From IMG/VR virus record IMGVR_UViG_3300005826_000294, positions 237,684-301,683 of that record: a stretch of 64,000 nucleotides of DNA. One strand, 5' to 3'. The position numbers and the translations under genes were made by a program. This document shows, one piece after another, positions 16,426 to 64,000 of this stretch (positions are counted from its first letter, which is position 1; every line of letters starts with the position of its first letter). The notes beneath the pieces were generated by a model. It made no database searches. It saw only the letters and a list, made by a program, of their open reading frames with translations, and was not told the origin of the DNA.

Positions 16426-19400
16426 TCAATTCTCATAAATATTTATTACTTCTTTTAATATCAATGTTTTAGTTCCATTGTAATCACTAACTTCACATGA
16501 AATTCTAGCAGGTTTTCCAATCTTCATATGATTTTTATATTTAGCATAATCCTCTGGCCAAAGAGTTAGTTCCACATCAGAACCCATAACATCTTCAATT
16601 AAATATTTACCCATTAATTTTCCAGCAGATCTTCCATTTTTAATTTTAAATTCACGAAGAAATGCTTTTATTATTACTTCAATTAATATTACATGGCGAT
16701 TGGGAAGATTTTTTAATCTAGAAATATAAGTTATATTATTTTTTGTAAAAAAATTTGGAAAAAGGTCATTTATATTACCCGAAACTAATTCTCCAAGAAC
16801 TTCCTGTTCATATCTTAATTTTTCCTGTTTTGACCATTCATTACCAGATAATTTAAAAGGAAACTCATCAATAACCATATCAACATCATATCCATCTTTT
16901 ATCTTTTTTCTAAGAAAAGTATTCATTTTATCACGAACCTTTTTTCCTTCATCATGAATATCTTTTCTATTTACATCTAATGAATCAAAACATCCAGCTT
17001 TTGATAATGCTTCAATTTTACTTTTATTTATAATTCTACCATCTACTCTATATAGAAAATCAACAAAAGAAGAAAAAGGTTGCTTTTTTATTATTTCATC
17101 TAAAGCCTTATCTCCCATCCCTTTTATGGCCGCCAATCCCATTACAATAGTTTTTTCATCTAAAACTTCATATCCAGATTTACTTTTATTTATATCTGGG
17201 GGAATAATTGTAACTCCTAATCTTCTACATTCTGCCTTTGCTCCATTTATTTCGTCATCTCTGCTAATTCCTCCTTTTGCTGTTTTAACTTTTAAATAAG
17301 CCGCTAAAAAAGCGGCCGGATAATGACATTTTAAATATGCGGTAATATATCCATTTATTGAATAGAATACAGCATGAGACTTATTAAATCCGTAACCTCC
17401 GAACCCAGAAACATATTTATCCCATACTTCTTTCGCCAATTCATATTCTACCTTATGAGTTTGCATCATTCCTTCTATAAATTCTGCTTCTAATTTTAAA
17501 GCAAAATCTGGATCTTTACCTTTAATTTTAGTAAATTTTCTCAGTTTATCAGCCTTATTTAGATCCCATCCCGCTACTTCACCAGCAATGCTCATTAATT
17601 GCTCTTCTGTTATTGCTAAACCATATGTTTCTCCAAGAGGACCTGATAAAGATTCATGAGGATAAGTAATATCTTTTTTCCCTATTCTTCGATCAATATA
17701 TTCATCTCTAGTTCCTTTTATACCGTCTTTAGCGGCAGCAGCCGGTCTTCCAAGAGCATTGATTATAGCAATATCTAAAATATTATTAGGTTTAATTTTT
17801 TTACATAAAATAGCCATAATCCCAGACTTACCTAATTGAAAAACACATTTGGTTTGACCTTTTTGAATCATATTATAAGTATCAATATCATTAATAGGAA
17901 TATCTTCCATTTGACTTGGAGCATTTTCTATACCAAGATTTCGTATATTCTTAAATGATTCATCTATAATATCTAATGTTGAAATAGCGAGAAAATCCAT
18001 TTTCACTAATCCTTCCTCTTCACATCTGTTTTTCTCATATTGAACTGCTATTTCATTATTTTTATCAATTCTTAATGGAGCAAAATCAAAAATAGGAATA
18101 TCAGAAACAACCATCCCAGCGGCATGTGTAGAATATTCTTTAGGCATTCCAACAATTTTATCAGCATATTCCATAAGTTCTGGGCATCTATCAGCAAAAT
18201 TTTTAAGAATTGGAGATAGTTCCATAGCTCTCTCCAAAGTTTTTACTTTCTTACCATCTTTATCTTGTTCAGGAATGGCCGCTTTAATTGCTTCAGCTAC
18301 TTTTACATAGTTGGTTCCTTCAGGAATTAATCCAGGCATTACATTTCTCATAGATTTTACGAGATCTGGAATTACATTTTTAGGCGTATATGTATTAATA
18401 TTAGAAACTTGGGCACAATGATCTCTTCCATATTTTTCCCTTACATATTCCTGTACTTTATCCCTACCGCTTGATGTAAAATCTGTATCAATATCTGGAA
18501 GATCTTTCTTATGAGCATTTTGAAATCTTTCAAATAATAATCCATAGTCTAATGGATCTACTCCATGAATTCCTAATAAATACGCAATCATAGAACCACC
18601 AACACTATTATGAGATGCATAATTTTGAGTAATATAAGAAAAATCATCTTCAACACTTATATCAAATACCTTATTTGGTTTTACATTAGAAACTTGTAGG
18701 ACTTTTGAGAAAAATCCATCTTTTCTAATATTCCTTTTTCTTACATTTGAAATTAAATTGAGAGAAAACTCTATACTATATGCATCTTTTCTATTATAGA
18801 TTTTATCATCAACTTTCCATTCTCCCCCTTTTCTAAAAATAACAGAAGAAGGTGTATTTAAGTAAATCAAAGCCTCTCTAATTTCAAACATTAATCTATT
18901 ACTACTAGTTATAATAGTACTTGTTTTTCCACGTCTATACCCATCAGAATCAATTAATCCTTCTATTAATGATCTTAATAGTGTATTTGGAAGACATCTA
19001 AAAAATCCTAAATATTTAGTATCACTCGTTTTCTTATATTCTGGAAATAAAGAATTAAATAAATTTACTAATATTTTATCATAAATACATATCTCCACAC
19101 AATTTCCTTTAATATACTTTTTACAAACAAATCCAAGATTATCAAAGAAATTATGTATCCTATCAATCCCGCTATCTTTTATATTACAGGAAAAAGAAAT
19201 ATAATATGAATAATTTTTATCACTTTTATAAGTCCCGTCTCCTATCCACCTTCCAAGAATATAATAAAAATCTTTATTTGCTGGAATAAATCTTTTATAT
19301 TTTACAATATCTTTTTCTTTAGTCCAATTTTCATAAGATATTCCTAATGTTTGTAAATACGAATATATTTTTTCATTACGAATAGAGCTTCTCTTATATT

Positions 19401-21132
19401 TTGCTATAGTTTTGAGAGATAATTTAGTATTTTTAGATATATTAATATTAGAAACAGACCTATTTTTATAATACTCTTTACTTATATATCTACTTCTAAT
19501 TGTATACTTATCATTAGCAAATTGACTTAAATCAATAGATTTTGGTTTAATAATTGTTCTTTTAATGGCTGGAGTAAAAAGAAAATCTCCTGCCTCAATT
19601 TCTCCAGCACCAATCCATTTTAAATTATCTCCTCTAATATGATGTGTATAATTTTTATGGGATCCATATAATCTATGAAGTTTTCCCTCCTTTGTTTCCA
19701 TCTTTTTAGAAACCAATAATCTATGATTTTTTGTAAAAACTAATTGCCCACAAGAATATTGGGTAGAAATAGAAACACAATCTTCATCTATATCATATTT
19801 AAATACATCTAATACTTCTTTAATATTTCCAGTATGAGTATATACTTTTTCTCCTATATTAACTTCATTTATATTCTTAAATCCATTTTGAGTTAAAACT
19901 TTTGTTTCTTTTGTTGTACAACCTCTTCCTATTCCAACTAAAATATTATTATTTTTAGCCCAATTAATCATATCTTCTGTAATAAGCATATAAGATGAGA
20001 AATTATTTCCTTCCAAAATCTTTAACTCTTTCTTAATTCTATTCCATCTTTTAGTTCTTTCTTCTTTATTAAAATGACCAAATTTTTTCTTGAACCCCTT
20101 AATAATATGAAATCGCATATATGCTTTATCTTGAGATAAATCTTCTGGTATATTAGATTTTCTCCTCCATTTCATAAATTCTTCAAAATCCTTTTCTTTG
20201 CTGGGATCAAAGATTGGAAGATGATTTTCTTTGGATTCTAAATAATCAGGATTATCACATCTATCAACTATTTTAATAGTATTTAAAACAGCCTCTTCAG
20301 CAACTTCTATACCATGATGTTTTAAAAGAAAATCATAAACCTCATCTCCATCTTTTACATAAAACTCATCAATTCCATATCTATGACGATCTGGATCATC
20401 AACAGGTTTTTTAGAATTTATAGCCATTAACACATCATGAACTTTAGCATCTTCTTTTGTTAAGTAATGAGCATCTGTCGCCACAACTAATGGTAATTCC
20501 AACTCCTTAGACATTTTAATTAAATTATTATTTAATTTTATTTGACTAAAATAATCATCTTTAAGATCATGAGGTTGAATTTCTAAATAAAACCTATCTT
20601 TAAAAATATTTGCTAATTTTGTAGCATACTTTACTGCTTCATCATATTTATCTTCAAATATAAACTTAGCCAGAATTCCATTACCACACGCAGAAGTAGC
20701 GATAATACCTTCATTATATTCTTCCAATACTTCCCAACTTATTCTTGGAAAAACTCTACCCATACTCACAACAAAATGCTGAAATCCAATATAATTAATT
20801 TTTAATAAATTTTTATATCCTTTTTCATTTTGAGATAATAAAACAATATGCTTTCTTTTTTCGGTTCTTTTTCTACCCTTCTTTCCTGCTTCTGGTTCTA
20901 TAATATCATATGAATGAACGAAATATTGTTCGCACCCAGGAATAAACTTAATTCCTGTTCTCTTATATGCCTTATACGCATCAAAATGAGCCGCTAAAGT
21001 CCCATGATCTGTAACTGCTAATGCTTTTTGTCCCTTTAGTTTTACTAAATCAAATAAATCATCTACACTTTGTAAGGCATCAAGCATACTCCCAAAATTA
21101 TTATGAGTATGTAAATGTGCGAAGTCTTTCAT
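16426..21132 (-). CDS. dnaE: DNA polymerase III alpha subunit containing an intein
   Basis: PHP motifs HLHTH, TDHG, ATDAHY; GRG|S; catalytic PDIDTDF; KMDFL; GFNKSHA; C-terminal OB fold. Confidence 0.97.
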   Translation of the reverse strand: MKDFAHLHTHNNFGSMLDALQSVDDLFDLVKLKGQKALAVTDHGTLAAHFDAYKAYKRTGIKFIPGCEQYFVHSYDIIEPEAGKKGRKRTEKRKHIVLLSQNEKGYKNLLKINYIGFQHFVVSMGRVFPRISWEVLEEYNEGIIATSACGNGILAKFIFEDKYDEAVKYATKLANIFKDRFYLEIQPHDLKDDYFSQIKLNNNLIKMSKELELPLVVATDAHYLTKEDAKVHDVLMAINSKKPVDDPDRHRYGIDEFYVKDGDEVYDFLLKHHGIEVAEEAVLNTIKIVDRCDNPDYLESKENHLPIFDPSKEKDFEEFMKWRRKSNIPEDLSQDKAYMRFHIIKGFKKKFGHFNKEERTKRWNRIKKELKILEGNNFSSYMLITEDMINWAKNNNILVGIGRGCTTKETKVLTQNGFKNINEVNIGEKVYTHTGNIKEVLDVFKYDIDEDCVSISTQYSCGQLVFTKNHRLLVSKKMETKEGKLHRLYGSHKNYTHHIRGDNLKWIGAGEIEAGDFLFTPAIKRTIIKPKSIDLSQFANDKYTIRSRYISKEYYKNRSVSNINISKNTKLSLKTIAKYKRSSIRNEKIYSYLQTLGISYENWTKEKDIVKYKRFIPANKDFYYILGRWIGDGTYKSDKNYSYYISFSCNIKDSGIDRIHNFFDNLGFVCKKYIKGNCVEICIYDKILVNLFNSLFPEYKKTSDTKYLGFFRCLPNTLLRSLIEGLIDSDGYRRGKTSTIITSSNRLMFEIREALIYLNTPSSVIFRKGGEWKVDDKIYNRKDAYSIEFSLNLISNVRKRNIRKDGFFSKVLQVSNVKPNKVFDISVEDDFSYITQNYASHNSVGGSMIAYLLGIHGVDPLDYGLLFERFQNAHKKDLPDIDTDFTSSGRDKVQEYVREKYGRDHCAQVSNINTYTPKNVIPDLVKSMRNVMPGLIPEGTNYVKVAEAIKAAIPEQDKDGKKVKTLERAMELSPILKNFADRCPELMEYADKIVGMPKEYSTHAAGMVVSDIPIFDFAPLRIDKNNEIAVQYEKNRCEEEGLVKMDFLAISTLDIIDESFKNIRNLGIENAPSQMEDIPINDIDTYNMIQKGQTKCVFQLGKSGIMAILCKKIKPNNILDIAIINALGRPAAAAKDGIKGTRDEYIDRRIGKKDITYPHESLSGPLGETYGLAITEEQLMSIAGEVAGWDLNKADKLRKFTKIKGKDPDFALKLEAEFIEGMMQTHKVEYELAKEVWDKYVSGFGGYGFNKSHAVFYSINGYITAYLKCHYPAAFLAAYLKVKTAKGGISRDDEINGAKAECRRLGVTIIPPDINKSKSGYEVLDEKTIVMGLAAIKGMGDKALDEIIKKQPFSSFVDFLYRVDGRIINKSKIEALSKAGCFDSLDVNRKDIHDEGKKVRDKMNTFLRKKIKDGYDVDMVIDEFPFKLSGNEWSKQEKLRYEQEVLGELVSGNINDLFPNFFTKNNITYISRLKNLPNRHVILIEVIIKAFLREFKIKNGRSAGKLMGKYLIEDVMGSDVELTLWPEDYAKYKNHMKIGKPARISCEVSDYNGTKTLILKEVINIYEN
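18607..19920 (-). mobile_element. Intein (438 aa) with LAGLIDADG homing endonuclease
   Basis: Extein GIGRG then C1 (CTTKETKVLT); ends YASHN followed by +1 Ser (SVGGS); motifs LGRWIGDGT and IEGLIDSDG; 1314 nt in frame. Confidence 0.95.
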
Positions 21133-58080: not shown

Positions 58081-58426
58081 TGGTGGAGATGCCGGGCATC
58101 GACTCCCGGGTCCAGACTTGATCAAATAAAGACATTTACAGGTTTAGCCAGCGTTTATAGCAACTTTTAAGCCCACTGGCAGGCTCGCAGTTGCTTGTTG
58201 CTCTATATCTCGCTTATAATCCGAACAACAAAATTATAAACCAACCTATTCATCGGCGCCTCTCTCAATCATCATAGGTAGGAGTTTTGAGGAGACGGGC
58301 TGCTAGGCAGCCATTGCGTATTCTTGTTCGCCAACTATTGTTTTGCCTAAGCTTTTAAAGAGTTCATAGACACACTCTACATGAAGTCTTTACCCAATTC
58401 AAACCTGTCGAATCCAATTCATCCCC
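58081..58426 (-). ncRNA. ssrA: tmRNA, tag peptide (A)GEQEYAMAA
   Basis: 5' GGGGAUG...GGAUUCGAC and 3' CAUCUCC-ACCA form the acceptor stem with the G3-U alanine determinant. Helix 2 CAGGUUUGA/UCAAGUCUG; pk1-like UUCAU/AUGAA plus AGAG/CUCU. AUAGUU precedes the resume codon; tag ORF 58332-58303. Confidence 0.95.
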
Positions 58427-58432
58427 AATATT

Positions 58433-59395
58433 TTATACTAATAACTCTACACATTCAGGCATCATATTTTCAAAAATATTTCTTCCATATGGAACCATAT
58501 TTAACTTTTTAAAATGAGTAATTAATGTTACAGATGAAGAATGACTTTCTATTATTGAATTTCTTATTTCATTACGTAAAATATCTCTTGTAAAATAAAT
58601 TATATCATCTGATAAATTAATCGAATCCAGTTCCTTTACCATACTATGATTAGAAGAAAGAATTATTCTATGTGAAAATCGTTCTGAAGTATCCCAAGAA
58701 ATAAATTTATTAAATTTTCCTATTAAAGAAGATGCTTTTTTAAGTTCCTTTATAGAAAACCATAATAATAATTTCTTTTGTTTTAAACTGCTTCTATATA
58801 TTGTTCCAGTTCTATCCAATCTATTAATTACCCAATGTGGAGTAAAAAATAAAGTTGAAATGAAACCTAAAAATAATTGAGGAGATCCTGTTTTGCTACA
58901 ATAAATAGATCCAACTTTAAGATCTTTATTTAAAATAATACTTAATCCATGATAATTAGATTTAAAACTATTATATAATTGAGAATTTGTTCGTATTAAC
59001 TTCATTTGACTATGATTCAAAAACCAAACAAAATCTCCATTTATTTTACCACCAATATCTATTCCACAATTATATATTATATCTAAAAGAACATCTTCTC
59101 GTAAATCTACAAGATAATTAGGAGGATATATAACTTTATATGCTCTACCTCCTCCAATTCTTTTATCAAGTCCCACTATTCTTAAATTAGATATAGGTTC
59201 ATTTTCTATTATAAAAGATGATCCTGTTTGCCATTTTTTAGCAGTTTTAATAAATCTATCACTATCTGCTGGTACGATAAATACTGGAATTACTTCTACC
59301 GGTTTTTCTTCTGGTTTTAATATAACTGTTTTAGTATTTTCTTTTAAAATAATGAATAGTTTTTCTGGAATACATATTAATTTCCTATCTCCCAT
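58433..59395 (-). CDS. Hypothetical protein
   Basis: 320-aa ORF. Confidence 0.7.
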   Translation of the reverse strand: MGDRKLICIPEKLFIILKENTKTVILKPEEKPVEVIPVFIVPADSDRFIKTAKKWQTGSSFIIENEPISNLRIVGLDKRIGGGRAYKVIYPPNYLVDLREDVLLDIIYNCGIDIGGKINGDFVWFLNHSQMKLIRTNSQLYNSFKSNYHGLSIILNKDLKVGSIYCSKTGSPQLFLGFISTLFFTPHWVINRLDRTGTIYRSSLKQKKLLLWFSIKELKKASSLIGKFNKFISWDTSERFSHRIILSSNHSMVKELDSINLSDDIIYFTRDILRNEIRNSIIESHSSSVTLITHFKKLNMVPYGRNIFENMMPECVELLV

Positions 59396-59934
59396 CGTAT
59401 AAACCTTTTTATTCTACATGATTCATTAACTTTATTAATCAATTCCGCCAAAAGTTCTTTTATAATTTTAGAATTATCTTTTATATATGTCTGTTCTAAT
59501 AAACAAACCTCAGAAAACCATTGAACTAATTCCGCTTCAGGATTTGAATTATTTGATCGCCTATCATATTCCTTTAAATAATCTTCTTCTGGAACATCAT
59601 CTCGTGATATATATTTTGGTTTCATTGATGCTATTTGTAAAGCAATCTCTCTCGCAAATCTTTGGAACTCTTCAGTTTTGGCAACAAAATCCGTATCACA
59701 ATGAAGTTCTACGAGAACTCCAATTCTATTTCCTGGATGAATATAAGAATGAACAATACCAATCTCAGATTCATTTGTTGGAGCAGAATTAATTATTCTT
59801 AATCCTCTCTTCATTAAAATATTTTCCGCTTCTTTTATGTCCTGATTTGCTTCTTTCAATGCTTTTTTACATTCAGCATAACTCGCTTGGGTTATTTTTC
59901 TTAAATTTTTAATATTTTCTATATTCATTCTCAT
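59377..59934 (-). CDS. tsf: Elongation factor Ts (short form)
   Basis: IKNLR...ECKKAL, GIVHSYIH, ELHCDTDFVAK, LLEQTYIKD, RFIRWEIG. Confidence 0.93.
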   Translation of the reverse strand: MRMNIENIKNLRKITQASYAECKKALKEANQDIKEAENILMKRGLRIINSAPTNESEIGIVHSYIHPGNRIGVLVELHCDTDFVAKTEEFQRFAREIALQIASMKPKYISRDDVPEEDYLKEYDRRSNNSNPEAELVQWFSEVCLLEQTYIKDNSKIIKELLAELINKVNESCRIKRFIRWEIGN

Positions 59935-61007: not shown

Positions 61008-61307
61008 TTACCTCTCTTTTAAATCACCAAATAATTTCATATCTATCGGCCATATTTCACATTTCTTTAACCCCATAGGCGCCCTAATTGTTATTCCTGA
61101 GCGCCTCTTAATTATAATGGTCTTATAAAATCTATATTTTTTGGTTCTATAATCGTGATCGCATTTTATTAATAGTTTTATAGAAACAGATGAATACGGA
61201 TTGAAAACTTTTAGCTCCGTATATTTAGGTGATACATGTGGAAGAAAACAAAAAACTATTAACCCTAATACTTTCTTATCCATAATGGAACTTCCCTCTT
61301 TTTCCAT
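61008..61307 (-). CDS. Hypothetical, possibly secreted small protein
   Basis: MDKKVLGLIVFCFLP is signal-like if the second Met is the start. Confidence 0.55.
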   Translation of the reverse strand: MEKEGSSIMDKKVLGLIVFCFLPHVSPKYTELKVFNPYSSVSIKLLIKCDHDYRTKKYRFYKTIIIKRRSGITIRAPMGLKKCEIWPIDMKLFGDLKER

Positions 61308-61735
61308 GAAAATAAATGCTTCTTATCTCTAATATAATAATTTCTATATGCCTTAATGGGATCTTTATCTTTTAGATCATCAGGAAGTGCCTGAGCAAAT
61401 GGTGTTAAACCTATATCTGGAATCTCTGGAAGATTATCTTTACACCATTCTACAACTCTTTGGGATTTATGTATCTTTTCATATCTATAAGTGTATTCAT
61501 AACATATTTCCATAGTATAATCACATAACCATAAATAATTAGATAGAGATGCTCTGCTCCATTTGGCAGATGGATGGTTTTTATGAGTAAGTTTATATGG
61601 AATATCTTTACCTCCTGAAATGTGATGAACTCCACATAATAATTGGCTCTGTTCTAATATCATTTTTACTACATGGCGATCTACATTATATTGGGCAGAA
61701 AGTTTCTTGTTCTCATCTAAAATAAATATATTCAT
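61265..61735 (-). CDS. Pyrimidine-dimer glycosylase / endonuclease V-like family protein
   Basis: MNIFILD...DRHVVKMILEQSQLL...YKLTHKNHPSAKW...NYLWL...TPFAQALP...AYRNYY; family recalled from phage annotations. Confidence 0.65.
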   Translation of the reverse strand: MNIFILDENKKLSAQYNVDRHVVKMILEQSQLLCGVHHISGGKDIPYKLTHKNHPSAKWSRASLSNYLWLCDYTMEICYEYTYRYEKIHKSQRVVEWCKDNLPEIPDIGLTPFAQALPDDLKDKDPIKAYRNYYIRDKKHLFSWKKREVPLWIRKY

Positions 61736-62346: not shown

Positions 62347-62400
62347 TTTTTTTACCTTATATTTATTAATTATTGGATGATTTTTTTTTCTTTACACTTA

Positions 62401-62768
62401 GCACACCATACCTTAAACTTGGACATTTTTACCAAGTCTTTTGGGTTTGTACGAGGCACCGTAGGGACCTCGAAGAAATCGCTGACATATATTAGTGGCA
62501 GCATTTTAACCAATCTTGCTTGTTATCTATCCAAATCACCTTTCTGTTTCTATTCATGGCTGGATACTCTACAATAAATTGCTATGTCGTCTGTTTGCTC
62601 TTCGTCTTCAAATCCCTACATTGCTTCTATTTCGGAGAGCAAATATCTACGATACCCGCCAATTGTTTTTTGAGGAGAGATCTTACCATCAGACTCTCAT
62701 CTGCGAAGCGTTTTGGGATCTACACCCAATAGTTCTGTGGCTTCTTTTATGATGATGAGTTTATTCAT
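62401..62768 (-). mobile_element. Degenerate, internally deleted IS607-family element: tnpA 5' pseudogene joined to the tnpB 3' tip and right-end hairpins
   Basis: From ATG 62768: MNKLIIIKEATELLGVDPKTLRR*ESDGKISPQKTIGGYRRYLLSEIEAM*GFEDEEQTDDIAIYCRVSSHE*KQKGDLDR*QARLV (MerR-like HTH plus serine-recombinase YxRVS). Then, in another frame from 62505, NAATNI...* (TnpB-like C-terminal motif). Confidence 0.85.
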
Positions 62769-63081
62769 TGAACTCACTATATGGCAAATTGAATATAAAA
62801 TTTATTTCTTCTTCTGATAAATTAGGAGAAATATCAATTAAACTATCTCCAACCTTAACTTTAATACTATATGTAGAGTATCTCTGTCCATCAAGAACAT
62901 ATTTGGGTGCTCGACTCATCAATAGAATAATTTTTTGCCTGATTTTTTGTGAATAATTTTCTTCGATGGATTTACGGAATTGTTCGTAATTGTTATGCTT
63001 GATAGCAAATTTTCTAATGTAGTTTAATATATTTTCTATTGAGATATTATCACTCATGTTTAACTCCACCGATGGCTTCAA
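62761..63081 (-). CDS. Hypothetical protein; 3' end may be the IS left end
   Basis: 106-aa ORF whose stop overlaps the tnpA ATG. Confidence 0.55.
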   Translation of the reverse strand: MKPSVELNMSDNISIENILNYIRKFAIKHNNYEQFRKSIEENYSQKIRQKIILLMSRAPKYVLDGQRYSTYSIKVKVGDSLIDISPNLSEEEINFIFNLPYSEFNE

Positions 63082-64000
63082 ATATTTTAACAGCGATTTG
63101 CTTTATAACAGGAACACATACAGAATTACCAAATTGTTTATATGCTTGTGTGTCACTTACTGGAATTACGAATGACTCTGGAAATCCCTGAAGTCGAGCA
63201 CATTCTCTAGGTGTCAATTTTCTAGGAGTATGTTTATGAGGAACTTTTACTAAAATTTCAGAACCATCTTTATAGTACCTAGCGGATAATGTGGCAGTGT
63301 AATTACTATCTTTAGTAACAATCTGATATCCAAAACCCTTCCCATTTTGTTTGTTGCGTTCCTTTCGTTCCTTGTGAGATGTCCATAACCGTTTCGATAT
63401 ACGATATTTTTTATCTACATTTTTATCTAAAATATCACCAACAACTGTTTGTGTTTCAAACGAATCCGGAAAAACAAAATTATTATATCTCTCTTGGTCT
63501 AAAAAACCAACTATATAAAGACGCCTTCTGTTTTGGGGAACACCAAAATCTTTGCCACTAAGTATTTCATACTTAACATGGTATCCAAGATTGTTAAGAG
63601 TATCTAAAATTACTTTAAATGTATTTCCACCATCATGATTTTTCAATCCAACCACATTCTCTAAAAACACAACTTTTGGTTTTTTATTTTCTATAATTTT
63701 GGCTACATCGAAAAATAACGTGCCCCTTGTATCTTCAAATCCTAATTTTTTTCCAGCGTGAGAAAACGCTTGACAAGGAAACCCAGCACATAAAATATCA
63801 TGATCTGGCACATCACTAGCATTTATTTTTGTTATATCTCCATATGGATTATCACCAAAATTCTTTTCATAAGTTTTAACAGCAAATTTGTCCCACTCAG
63901 ATGAAAATACATATTTCGTCTCTAAAGACATTTGTTGAGCCGCCAAATGAAAACCAAGCCTAATTCCACCAATGCCAGCAAATAAATCTATTAACCTCAT
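63050..64000 (-). CDS. C5 cytosine DNA methyltransferase, probably CCNGG/CCWGG family
   Basis: Motif I DLFAGIGG, IV GFPCQAFS, VI ENV, VIII QNRRR, X FGNSV; TRD segment GKGFGY...TLSARYYKDGSEIL, which I recall from SsoII/Dcm-type enzymes. Confidence 0.92.
   Translation of the reverse strand: MRLIDLFAGIGGIRLGFHLAAQQMSLETKYVFSSEWDKFAVKTYEKNFGDNPYGDITKINASDVPDHDILCAGFPCQAFSHAGKKLGFEDTRGTLFFDVAKIIENKKPKVVFLENVVGLKNHDGGNTFKVILDTLNNLGYHVKYEILSGKDFGVPQNRRRLYIVGFLDQERYNNFVFPDSFETQTVVGDILDKNVDKKYRISKRLWTSHKERKERNKQNGKGFGYQIVTKDSNYTATLSARYYKDGSEILVKVPHKHTPRKLTPRECARLQGFPESFVIPVSDTQAYKQFGNSVCVPVIKQIAVKIFEAIGGVKHE

What the first reader, a model, noticed from the sequence alone, without database searches (positions are those of the whole stretch)
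62401..62768. Hidden miniature IS607: dead tnpA stump spliced to the TnpB tail and a possible guide-RNA scaffold
Seen: a tnpA-like frame with four stops at TGA 62699, TAG 62618, TAG 62552 and TAA 62525, none visible in the ORF track. It is followed abruptly by NAATNI in another frame and by two hairpins (CGAGG..CCTCG 62452-62472; ACTTGG..CCAAGT 62417-62437). Established: IS607 carries serine-recombinase tnpA plus tnpB, and the TnpB omega/reRNA overlaps the tnpB 3' end and right end, taking its guide from flanking DNA. Inference: more than 1 kb was deleted but the RNA-scaffold end was kept. It could still make a guide RNA whose spacer is the flank just below ~62400, usable by a TnpB in trans.
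Basis: partly seen in the sequence, partly recalled or inferred. Interest (0 to 1): 0.65.

Follow-up and report, generated by a model that had tools for sequence, protein, structure and literature searches.

The report
Decayed IS607 end with restriction-modification cargo
The flagged 364 bases are the broken remains of a transposase gene and an RNA-guided nuclease gene at the right end of a 2.5-kb mobile element that carries a restriction-modification system in a giant phage genome. They are a real relic that has probably lost the ability to make a working guide RNA.

Summary
On the minus strand, 62768-62505 is the first 87 codons of an IS607 tnpA with four in-frame stops. From 62506 to 62406 it is joined to the last 30 codons of tnpB and the right end (RE).

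An intact sister copy (tnpA 205 aa, tnpB 367 aa) lies in the same phage contig. It is 89% identical and shows that 1,360 bp were deleted at an AAA microhomology.

The interpretation needs two corrections.
- **Not a miniature IS.** The longer source contig shows the matching left end and a conserved small gene, orfX, about 2.1 kb upstream of the stump and outside the window. An EcoRII-like endonuclease, a C5 methyltransferase and ORF106 sit between orfX and the stump. The stump is therefore the gutted transposition module of a ~2.48-kb cargo-bearing IS607-family element.
- **The guide-RNA scaffold is incomplete.** Relatives from 29 loci define a covarying six-helix RNA of about 155 nt that ends at ...GGAACGG. 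The relic keeps helices 4-6 and has lost helix 2 and the 5' strands of helices 1 and 3. Its near-invariant tip is also mutated.

It is most likely an inert relic. One feature is unexplained: half of the non-synonymous changes in the stump are stop codons.

The parts
62385..62405 (-). Right flank of the element. This is the position where a TnpB guide would be read (5'-TGTGCTAAGTGTAAAG...).
   Evidence: Homology to every relative stops after the GG core. The 16-mer occurs only here in the window. A 19-nt match in an unrelated viral contig (L040) has no other similarity and is taken as chance.
62406..62414 (-). Right-end tip, AAGGTATGG, with the GG core at 62407-62406. It is a degenerate copy of the family consensus AGGAACGG.
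   Evidence: 22 related loci end in ...AAGTTTRWAGGAACGG|T, after which their flanks diverge. Relative to the parent's AGGGAACGG, the window has two substitutions and a 1-nt deletion.
62417..62437 (-). Hairpin 2 (helix 6 of the omega-RNA-like structure). Its 3' strand TGTCCAAGTT is the reverse complement of the left-end repeat AACTTGGACA.
   Evidence: All 7 pairs of this helix show two-sided changes across 29 sequences. It carries no substitution relative to the parent. It is the only exact AACTTGGACA in the window.
62452..62472 (-). Hairpin 1 (helix 4), CGAGG...CCTCG.
   Evidence: All 5 pairs covary, every cell is paired and none is broken, on both the MAFFT and the model-fitted alignments. 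The amino acids encoded on the two strands change together (RG..AS, QG..AL, SG..SR, TG..SC).
62413..62505 (-). Last 30 codons plus the stop of tnpB (NAATNICQRFLRGPYGASYKPKRLGKNVQV*). The RuvC-III Asp lies just upstream of the junction and is deleted.
   Evidence: 89.6% nt identity to L003 4576-4671, and 26 of 30 residues identical to the parent's C-terminus.
62505..62506 (-). Deletion junction. Parent positions L003 3216-4575 (1,360 bp) are missing, and the two alignments overlap by AA(A) microhomology.
62505..62768 (-). tnpA stump: codons 1-87, covering the MerR-type HTH and the first strand of the serine-recombinase domain with the SS motif. Stops are at 62697-62699, 62616-62618, 62550-62552 and 62523-62525.
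62761..63081 (-). ORF106, the last cargo gene. Its stop codon lies inside the tnpA start (ATGAATAA). No family match.
   Evidence: It is unrelated to the cargo ORFs of the sister copy.
63050..64000 (-). Cargo C5 cytosine DNA methyltransferase (316 aa). The EcoRII-C-like endonuclease, orfX and the left end follow beyond the window edge (L166 533-1153, 311-520 and 272-323).
   Evidence: Pfam PF00145 at 5e-109 and PF09019 at 3.1e-08. L166 272-507 is 89% identical to the parent's left end plus orfX. L166 is identical to the window over the 5,264 nt they share.

Best explanation
The segment is the decayed transposition and guide module at the right end of a ~2.48-kb IS607-family element in a jumbo-phage genome.

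Shown:
- The layout is left end, orfX, cargo (EcoRII-like endonuclease, Dcm-type methyltransferase, ORF106), then the first 87 codons of tnpA with four nonsense codons, a 1,360-bp microhomology deletion, the last 30 codons of tnpB, and the right end with its GG core.
- A sister copy in the same genome is 89% identical in all shared parts. It has intact tnpA and tnpB and different cargo.
- In this family the last ~155 nt before the right end fold into a six-helix RNA that covaries although it lies inside the tnpB reading frame. This is where a TnpB omega RNA is found.

Inferred:
- The copy was a working element for most of its divergence, because 21 of 29 differences are at third codon positions. 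It was then inactivated.
- What remains of the RNA is helices 4-6 and a mutated tip. That is too little to load TnpB, so the segment now does nothing except travel with the cargo. It also supplies the stop codon of ORF106.
For: Identity and anatomy.

Left end, orfX and cargo.

Family ends and GG core: RE consensus in 22 loci. LE junctions read RAAGG|GTTR in 7 loci. In L006 a tnpB-only copy sits in a dUTPase gene, which reads in frame again once everything between the two GG cores is removed.

RNA structure: RNAalifold on a MAFFT alignment finds helices 1, 3 and 4 with two-sided changes. On 29 model-aligned sequences 91.5% of cells pair, 26 of 37 pairs show two-sided changes, 0 of 500 shuffles reach this, and slid controls give 37-49%.

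Loss in the relic: the junction falls at column 58 of alignment A3, downstream of helix 2 and of the 5' strands of helices 1 and 3. The relic scores 59.8 bits against 126.4 for the parent, with non-canonical marks all through helices 1-3.

Tip and left end: the RE tip is mutated, and the second left-end repeat has an 8-bp deletion.

By analogy, in another IS607 TnpB the scaffold is 187 nt long and disrupting a distal pseudoknot abolishes cleavage (PMC11061315).
Against: Hairpins 1 and 2 and the GG core are untouched: there is no substitution in 62415-62437 or 62444-62477, while the rest of the tail differs by about 10%. The retained 102 nt fold as in the relatives, with z = -2.7. An apparently intact TnpB with D, E and D in the RuvC motifs is encoded in the same genome. 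No experiment defines the minimal scaffold for this subfamily, so residual guide activity cannot be excluded. Both ends are present, so mobilisation in trans by the sister TnpA cannot be excluded either.
Confidence: 0.8

Rival explanations
1. The retained tnpB tail and right end still give a guide RNA whose spacer is the flank below 62406. The TnpB of the sister copy loads it in trans, for example to cut related phages that lack the element and so copy the restriction-modification cargo into them.
For: Helices 4-6 and the GG core are intact and carry no substitutions. An intact TnpB is in the same genome. All neighbouring genes are on the same strand, so read-through transcription is plausible.
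Against: The relic has lost helix 2 and the 5' strands of helices 1 and 3, which covary and so are under selection. The near-invariant tip next to the guide has two substitutions and a deletion. The model score is halved. There is no enrichment of promoter-like sites. The hairpin conservation can be explained by the long period when the copy was intact.
Confidence: 0.12
2. A non-autonomous cargo transposon. The unit keeps both ends and can still be excised and inserted by the serine recombinase TnpA of the sister copy, moving the restriction-modification genes. This is compatible with the best explanation for the RNA part.
For: The left end with its first AACTTGGACA repeat, and the right end with the inverted repeat and GG core, are both present and 89-96% identical to the sister's ends. 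In a tested IS607-family element, about 40 bp of LE and 60 bp of RE suffice for excision (bioRxiv 10.1101/2023.11.20.567912).
Against: The second left-end repeat has an 8-bp deletion and the RE tip is mutated. Only one such copy is seen: a search for the hairpin-1 24-mer finds two places in the contig, the relic and the intact copy, and the RNA model finds one match in the window.
Confidence: 0.2
3. The stops are not lesions. TGA is read as Trp and TAG/TAA as Gln (recoding), and a TnpA-derived protein is still made.
For: All four stops sit exactly at W or Q codons of the parent.
Against: No bacterial or phage genetic code reassigns all three stop codons. Neighbouring genes, including ORFs of 1,568 and 1,393 aa, read through in code 11. 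The sister copy in the same genome uses TGG, CAG and CAA at those positions. After codon 87 the frame runs into out-of-frame tnpB sequence, so no recombinase domain could be made. W and Q codons are also the ones a single transition turns into stops.
Confidence: 0.01

Closest known systems
IS607-family insertion sequences (IS607, IS1535, CboIStron): serine-recombinase TnpA plus TnpB
   Same: The TnpA has an N-terminal MerR-type HTH followed by a resolvase domain, with tnpB downstream. There are no terminal inverted repeats or target duplication. A GG core lies at both junctions, and short repeats lie near the ends. The RE ends ...ACGG, as CboIStron's ends ...UCGG, and the LE flank ends in ...AGG(G), like its TGGG TAM.
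   Different: This subfamily has an extra conserved small gene (orfX) between the LE and tnpA. It also has a slot between orfX and tnpA that holds different cargo in different copies: restriction-modification genes here, ORF205+ORF62 in the sister copy, and a 98-aa ORF in L018. The host is a jumbo phage. In the window copy both tnpA and tnpB are destroyed.
TnpB omega RNA / reRNA (ISDra2; IS607 ISFba1 with the RAGATH-18 motif)
   Same: It is a structured RNA that overlaps the 3' end of tnpB and ends at the transposon right end, so the flank would be read as the guide. It has multiple stem-loops that are needed as a whole in the tested systems.
   Different: No Rfam family, RAGATH-18 included, matches this RNA. 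Here the whole scaffold lies inside the reading frame, with the stop codon 0-60 nt from the end. The window copy has only the 3' two-thirds.
Non-autonomous deletion derivatives of IS200/IS605/IS607 elements (MITE/PATE-like elements, tnpA-less IStrons)
   Same: An internal deletion removed the transposition genes while keeping the ends. A second, independent tnpA-tnpB deletion fusion exists in this family (L031).
   Different: It is single-copy and not miniature, because it carries 1.9 kb of cargo. The deletion cut into the RNA scaffold, whereas L031 keeps all of it (156.6 bits).
Mobile type II restriction-modification units (EcoRII/Dcm-like)
   Same: An adjacent C5 methyltransferase and an endonuclease with an EcoRII-C domain lie inside a mobile element.
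   Different: The endonuclease is short (206 aa) and matches only part of the catalytic-domain profile. I found no paper reporting carriage inside an IS607-family element in the library searched.

Membership tests
IS607 family | TnpA is a small serine recombinase with an N-terminal MerR-type HTH | tested here: met
   Stump: NF033518 at E 5.8e-14, covering profile 1-77 of 187, and Pfam MerR at 2.9e-10. Sister copy: MerR plus a full Resolvase domain, at 2.2e-24.
IS607 family | tnpB (OrfB) downstream of tnpA on the same strand | tested here: met
   Sister copy: 367 aa, Pfam Cas12f1-like_TNB at 9.6e-16 and OrfB_IS605 at 5.7e-05 (below its curated cut-off: 23.7 bits against 30.5). Relic: the last 30 codons, 89.6% nt identity.
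IS607 family | GG core dinucleotide at both junctions and no target-site duplication | tested here: met
   The RE ends ...AACGG|T in 22 loci. The LE junction is ...AGG|GTT in 7 loci. In the window element the junctions are ...TATTGG-GG-TAACC (L166) and ...TAT-GG-TGTG (62407-62406). In L006 the dUTPase frame is restored by joining the flanks at a single GG.
IS607 family | Short sub-terminal repeats instead of terminal inverted repeats | tested here: met
   AACTTGGACA occurs twice at the LE of the sister copy, and there is one inverted copy in RE hairpin 2. The window element has one full and one truncated LE repeat.
IS607 family | Transposition catalysed by TnpA | not testable with these tools
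   This needs an excision or integration assay. The relic's own tnpA is dead.
TnpB omega RNA | Conserved secondary structure overlapping the tnpB 3' end and ending at the RE | tested here: met
   For the family: six helices, 91.5% of cells paired, 26 of 37 pairs with two-sided changes, and 0 of 500 shuffles as high. RNAalifold on an unfitted MAFFT alignment also finds helices 1, 3 and 4.
TnpB omega RNA | Complete scaffold present in this copy | tested here: not met
   The junction is at A3 column 58, so helix 2 and the 5' strands of helices 1 and 3 are replaced by tnpA sequence. The score is 59.8 bits against 126.4 for the parent, and the tip GGAACGG reads GGTATGG.
TnpB omega RNA | The RNA is expressed, processed and bound by TnpB, and its guide directs cleavage next to a TAM | not testable with these tools
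   No expression data are available. The promoter scan is not enriched.
Rfam-curated omega/reRNA motifs (e.g. RAGATH-18) | Match to a curated covariance model | tested here: not met
   Nothing but a tmRNA in the window at gathering threshold. No match at the tnpB 3' ends of L003, L006, L009 or L014 at E <= 1.
Miniature non-autonomous element (MITE-like) | Both ends close together, no cargo, several copies | tested here: not met
   The LE is 2.1 kb upstream of the stump with 1.9 kb of cargo between. The RNA model finds one match in the window and the hairpin-1 24-mer finds two places in the contig, the relic and the intact copy.
Type II restriction-modification system | Cognate methyltransferase and endonuclease genes side by side | tested here: inconclusive
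   The methyltransferase is clear: PF00145 at 5e-109, full length. The endonuclease matches PF09019 EcoRII-C at 3.1e-08 but only over profile positions 88-150 of 165. Activity and specificity were not tested.

The most novel reading that the evidence does not exclude
The gutted module is not junk. The remaining helices 4-6 plus the flank still form a minimal guide RNA (or the two ends still serve as TnpA substrates). The intact sister copy's TnpB/TnpA would then drive a restriction-modification cassette into related phage genomes, making this a two-component, RNA-guided homing system for a defence cargo in a jumbo phage. The concentration of lesions on tnpA (four stops among eight non-synonymous changes) would then reflect selection to silence the redundant transposase while keeping the ends.
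Probability: 0.1. Interest if true: 0.65.

Novelty: new variant of a known kind. Interest (0 to 1): 0.35.

Why it matters
As a relic the segment is ordinary, because decayed IS copies are common. The work around it gives four more useful things.

- **A phage-borne IS607/TnpB subfamily.** It has sharply defined ends (LE ...AGG|GTT, RE ...AACGG|T), an extra conserved gene (orfX) and a cargo slot. In this genome the slot holds a restriction-modification pair. I found no report of such cargo in IS607 elements in the searchable literature.
- **An omega-RNA-like structure not in Rfam.** It is written entirely inside the tnpB reading frame, and the amino acids on the two strands of a stem change together. 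This is a clean natural example of dual coding.
- **A natural pair for experiments.** The same genome holds an intact copy and a truncated copy. This could be used to ask how much scaffold a TnpB needs.
- **An unexplained excess of nonsense mutations in the stump.**

Tried and rejected
- Nucleotide searches of the region and of 24 kb of the window against GenBank phages found nothing. A protein search found only TnpA homologues with identity below 50%.
- I looked for an empty site in related phages. ORF106 and the 138-aa neighbour have no relatives in IMG/VR other than the contig itself. ORF106 is not on record as a called gene. The 19-nt flank match in L040 is an unrelated zinc-ribbon gene with no other similarity, so I take it as chance.
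- I first concluded that the relic had no left end. Homology to the sister copy starts exactly at the tnpA ATG, there is no LE repeat in the window, no orfX in the window, and no second double repeat in the IMG/VR contig. That conclusion was wrong. The IMG/VR contig is trimmed at the methyltransferase start, and the longer JGI contig holds the LE and orfX.
- A scan of viral contigs with the degenerate RE 17-mer gave mostly chance hits. Only 5 of the 79 loci scanned match the RNA model.
- orfX has no Pfam or PHROG match. An AlphaFold model (pLDDT 76.6: three strands plus a helix) has no Foldseek match in the PDB at E <= 0.001.
- I considered 5-methylcytosine deamination at Dcm sites as the source of the C>T stops. 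None of the four sites lies in a CCWGG context (sequence).
- I considered an alternative genetic code and rejected it (see rival explanations).
- I considered joining ORF106 in frame to the right flank as an 'empty site' (sequence). This became irrelevant once the true left end was found.

Full report
**1. What is in the sequence**

The window is AT-rich (25-34% G+C), and nearly all long ORFs are on the minus strand. It equals the last 64 kb of IMG/VR contig UViG_3300005826_000294, which is 301,683 bp long. PHROG matches to a DNA polymerase and an SbcC-like protein confirm a large phage.

On the minus strand, the frame that opens with ATG at 62768 reads a MerR-type helix-turn-helix followed by the ...IYCRVSSHE... 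start of a serine-recombinase domain. With X at the stops it matches:
- NCBIfam NF033518 'IS607 family transposase' at E 5.8e-14, covering profile positions 1-77 of 187.
- Pfam MerR at 2.9e-10.

From 62505 another frame reads NAATNICQRFLRGPYGASYKPKRLGKNVQV, with its stop at 62413-62415. The two hairpins sit at the stated coordinates.

**2. The intact sister copy**

A 24-nt probe from hairpin 1 hit a second place in the same contig. Fetching it through the TnpB protein gave L003. L003 encodes an intact tnpA (205 aa: MerR plus a full Resolvase domain) and an intact tnpB (367 aa: Cas12f1-like TNB and OrfB_IS605, the latter below Pfam's own cut-off, with GVDTG, VEKL and NADINAA motifs).

The window matches it in two pieces:
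- 62768-62505 aligns to L003 2952-3215 (264 nt, 89.0% identity).
- 62506-62411 aligns to L003 4576-4671 (96 nt, 89.6% identity).

The 1,360 bp in between are missing, and the two alignments overlap by AA(A), which points to a microhomology deletion. The deletion removed the rest of the recombinase, almost all of TnpB and the RuvC-III aspartate.

The four stops replace W24 (TGG>TGA), Q51 (CAG>TAG), Q73 (CAA>TAG) and Q82 (CAA>TAA). W24, Q73 and Q82 are invariant in nine homologues.

**3. Ends of the family**

Thirty-one metagenome loci and three viral loci encode relatives of the TnpB at 50-81% identity. In 22 of them the sequence ends in ...AAGTTTRWAGGAACGG|T, after which the flanks are unrelated.

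On the left, seven loci share flank-RAAGG|GTTR..., followed by short direct repeats.

L006 is a tnpB-only copy inside a dUTPase gene. Removing everything between the two GG dinucleotides restores the reading frame (...LPKG SRIAQLV...).

This is the IS607 pattern: a GG core and no target duplication (PMC6188088). The RE ends ...ACGG, as the tested CboIStron ends ...UCGG beside a TGGG TAM (bioRxiv 10.1101/2023.11.20.567912).

In the window the right end reads ...CAAGTTTAAGGTATGG|TGTG. The GG core is at 62407-62406. Compared with the parent's AGGGAACGG, the tip has two substitutions and a 1-nt deletion.

**4. The element is not miniature**

Homology to L003 begins exactly at the tnpA ATG, and the window holds no left-end repeat or orfX. 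For a while the stump therefore looked end-less.

The IMG/VR contig is trimmed, however. The source JGI contig (312,596 bp), reached through an exact-protein look-up, continues past the window edge (L166). It is identical to the window over the 5,264 nt they share.

L166 272-507 is 89% identical to L003 1806-2050, which is the left end plus orfX. The sequence begins GGGTAACCAACAGTAGCCAATAAACTTGGACA..., and the second repeat is shortened by 8 bp. orfX scores HMM E 3e-25.

Between orfX and the tnpA stump lie three genes:
- a 206-aa protein with an EcoRII-C match (3.1e-08, partial coverage);
- the 316-aa C5 methyltransferase that fills window 63050-64000 (5e-109);
- ORF106 (62761-63081).

The unit therefore runs from L166 about 274 to 2748, roughly 2.48 kb. 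Its order is LE, orfX, restriction-modification cargo, gutted tnpA/tnpB, RE.

The sister copy has the same architecture with other cargo (ORF205, ORF62). It is inserted in a PIN-PhoH gene that carries a LAGLIDADG intein. In L008, L010, L014, L022 and L031 orfX abuts tnpA directly. L018 has a 98-aa ORF in the same slot. The orfX-tnpA boundary therefore behaves as a cargo slot.

**5. The RNA**

An unfitted MAFFT alignment of the last 200 nt of 23 copies already shows three features:
- hairpin 1 covarying at every pair with none broken;
- a GCNG...CNGC hairpin;
- a long-range helix.

A covariance model built from 11 copies was aligned to 29 copies. It gives six helices over about 155 nt. Of all cells, 91.5% are paired, 26 of 37 pairs show two-sided changes, 0 of 500 shuffles reach these values, and slid controls reach only 37-49%. 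That alignment is fitted to the model, so the unfitted result is the independent check.

The whole structure lies inside the tnpB frame. In hairpin 1 the codons on the two strands change together (RG..AS, QG..AL, TG..AG, SG..AA, SG..SR, TG..SC).

No Rfam family matches it.

One caveat concerns helix 6. Its 3' strand is also the inverted copy of the left-end repeat, so part of its conservation may be DNA-level, from TnpA binding.

**6. What the relic keeps**

The deletion junction falls at column 58 of alignment A3. Helix 2 and the 5' strands of helices 1 and 3 are replaced by tnpA sequence. Helices 4, 5 and 6 remain.

The relic scores 59.8 bits, against 126.4 for the parent and 170-189 for the seed sequences. 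It is the only hit in the window.

The retained 102 nt fold into hairpins 1 and 2 (z = -2.7). In a 150-nt context, tnpA-derived sequence competes for the 3' strand of hairpin 2.

In another IS607 TnpB the scaffold is 187 nt long, and breaking a distal pseudoknot abolishes cleavage (PMC11061315). That is an analogy, not a test.

Taken together with the mutated tip and the shortened left-end repeat, I read the module as inert (about 0.8). Residual guide function stands at about 0.1, and trans-mobilisation by the sister TnpA at about 0.2.

**7. History, and an oddity**

Of the 29 differences in the stump, 21 are at third codon positions. The two copies therefore diverged mainly while both encoded working proteins.

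Of the eight codons changed non-synonymously, four are stops. With L035 as outgroup for codons 42-88, the window branch has ten third-position changes and three first-position changes, and all three first-position changes are stops.

Under neutral models the chance that a non-synonymous change is nonsense is 0.05-0.11. That gives P(>=4 of 8) between 4e-4 and 8e-3.

The segment was flagged because it had many stops, so some ascertainment bias applies. Even so, the lesions cluster on function-critical sites: W24, the residues next to the catalytic serines, and the RE tip. I have no tested explanation. The candidates are repeated selection to silence the copy, perhaps to fix the cargo, or chance.

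**8. Verdict**

The anatomy of the stump, the deletion and the RNA-bearing tail are right. The 'miniature IS' label and the working-guide idea are not supported.

The object is a degenerate member of a phage-borne IS607/TnpB subfamily with orfX and a cargo slot, here holding a restriction-modification pair. It is a new variant of a known kind and of moderate interest.

Noticed in passing
window 58081-58426 (-): A full-length tmRNA gene (Rfam RF00023, 148 bits, E 3.7e-58) in a phage genome. ARAGORN did not call it.
   Followed up: no
window 59377-59934 (-): A phage-encoded elongation factor Ts homologue (Pfam EF_TS at 3.1e-23), about 1 kb from the tmRNA with one unannotated 320-aa ORF between them. 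The two form a small cluster of translation-related genes.
   Followed up: no
window 62505-62768 (-): Excess of nonsense over missense changes in the tnpA stump: 4 stops among 8 non-synonymous codon changes, and 3 of 3 on the polarised window branch. P is about 4e-4 to 8e-3 under neutral models.
   Followed up: partly
L003 1588-1821 and 4666-5475: The intact sister IS607 sits inside a PIN-PhoH gene that also carries a LAGLIDADG intein. The PIN profile stops at position 65 of 132, and the gene resumes inside the homing-endonuclease domain. More than the IS insertion has therefore happened there, and the gene is broken.
   Followed up: partly
L003 1893-2111; L166 311-520; L008, L010, L014, L018, L022, L031: orfX is a conserved ~60-aa gene inside the left end of this IS607 subfamily, usually with its stop overlapping the tnpA start. 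It has no Pfam or PHROG match. The AlphaFold model has three strands plus a helix and no PDB fold match. It could be a recombination accessory factor.
   Followed up: partly
L031 237-1139: An independent in-frame deletion fuses about 63 codons of tnpA (the HTH) to TnpB from about residue 141. This copy keeps the complete RNA scaffold (156.6 bits).
   Followed up: partly
L006 2946-4113: A tnpB-only copy (LE, tnpB, RE; no orfX or tnpA; TnpB 81% identical) is inserted in a dUTPase gene. The frame is restored by joining the flanks at one GG, which gives a clean natural empty-site reconstruction.
   Followed up: yes
window 16426-21132 (-): A 1,568-aa DNA polymerase whose residues 617-843 match part of a ribonucleotide-reductase PHROG rather than polymerase. 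This looks like an inserted intein-type segment.
   Followed up: no
window 61265-61735 (-): A 156-aa ORF with a weak match to pyrimidine-dimer DNA glycosylase (Pfam Pyr_excise, E 6.9e-4, just under the cut-off).
   Followed up: no
window 64000 / L166 1154: The IMG/VR contig ends exactly at the methyltransferase start codon, inside the IS607 element. The JGI source contig runs 10.9 kb further. The trimming hides the left half of the element.
   Followed up: yes
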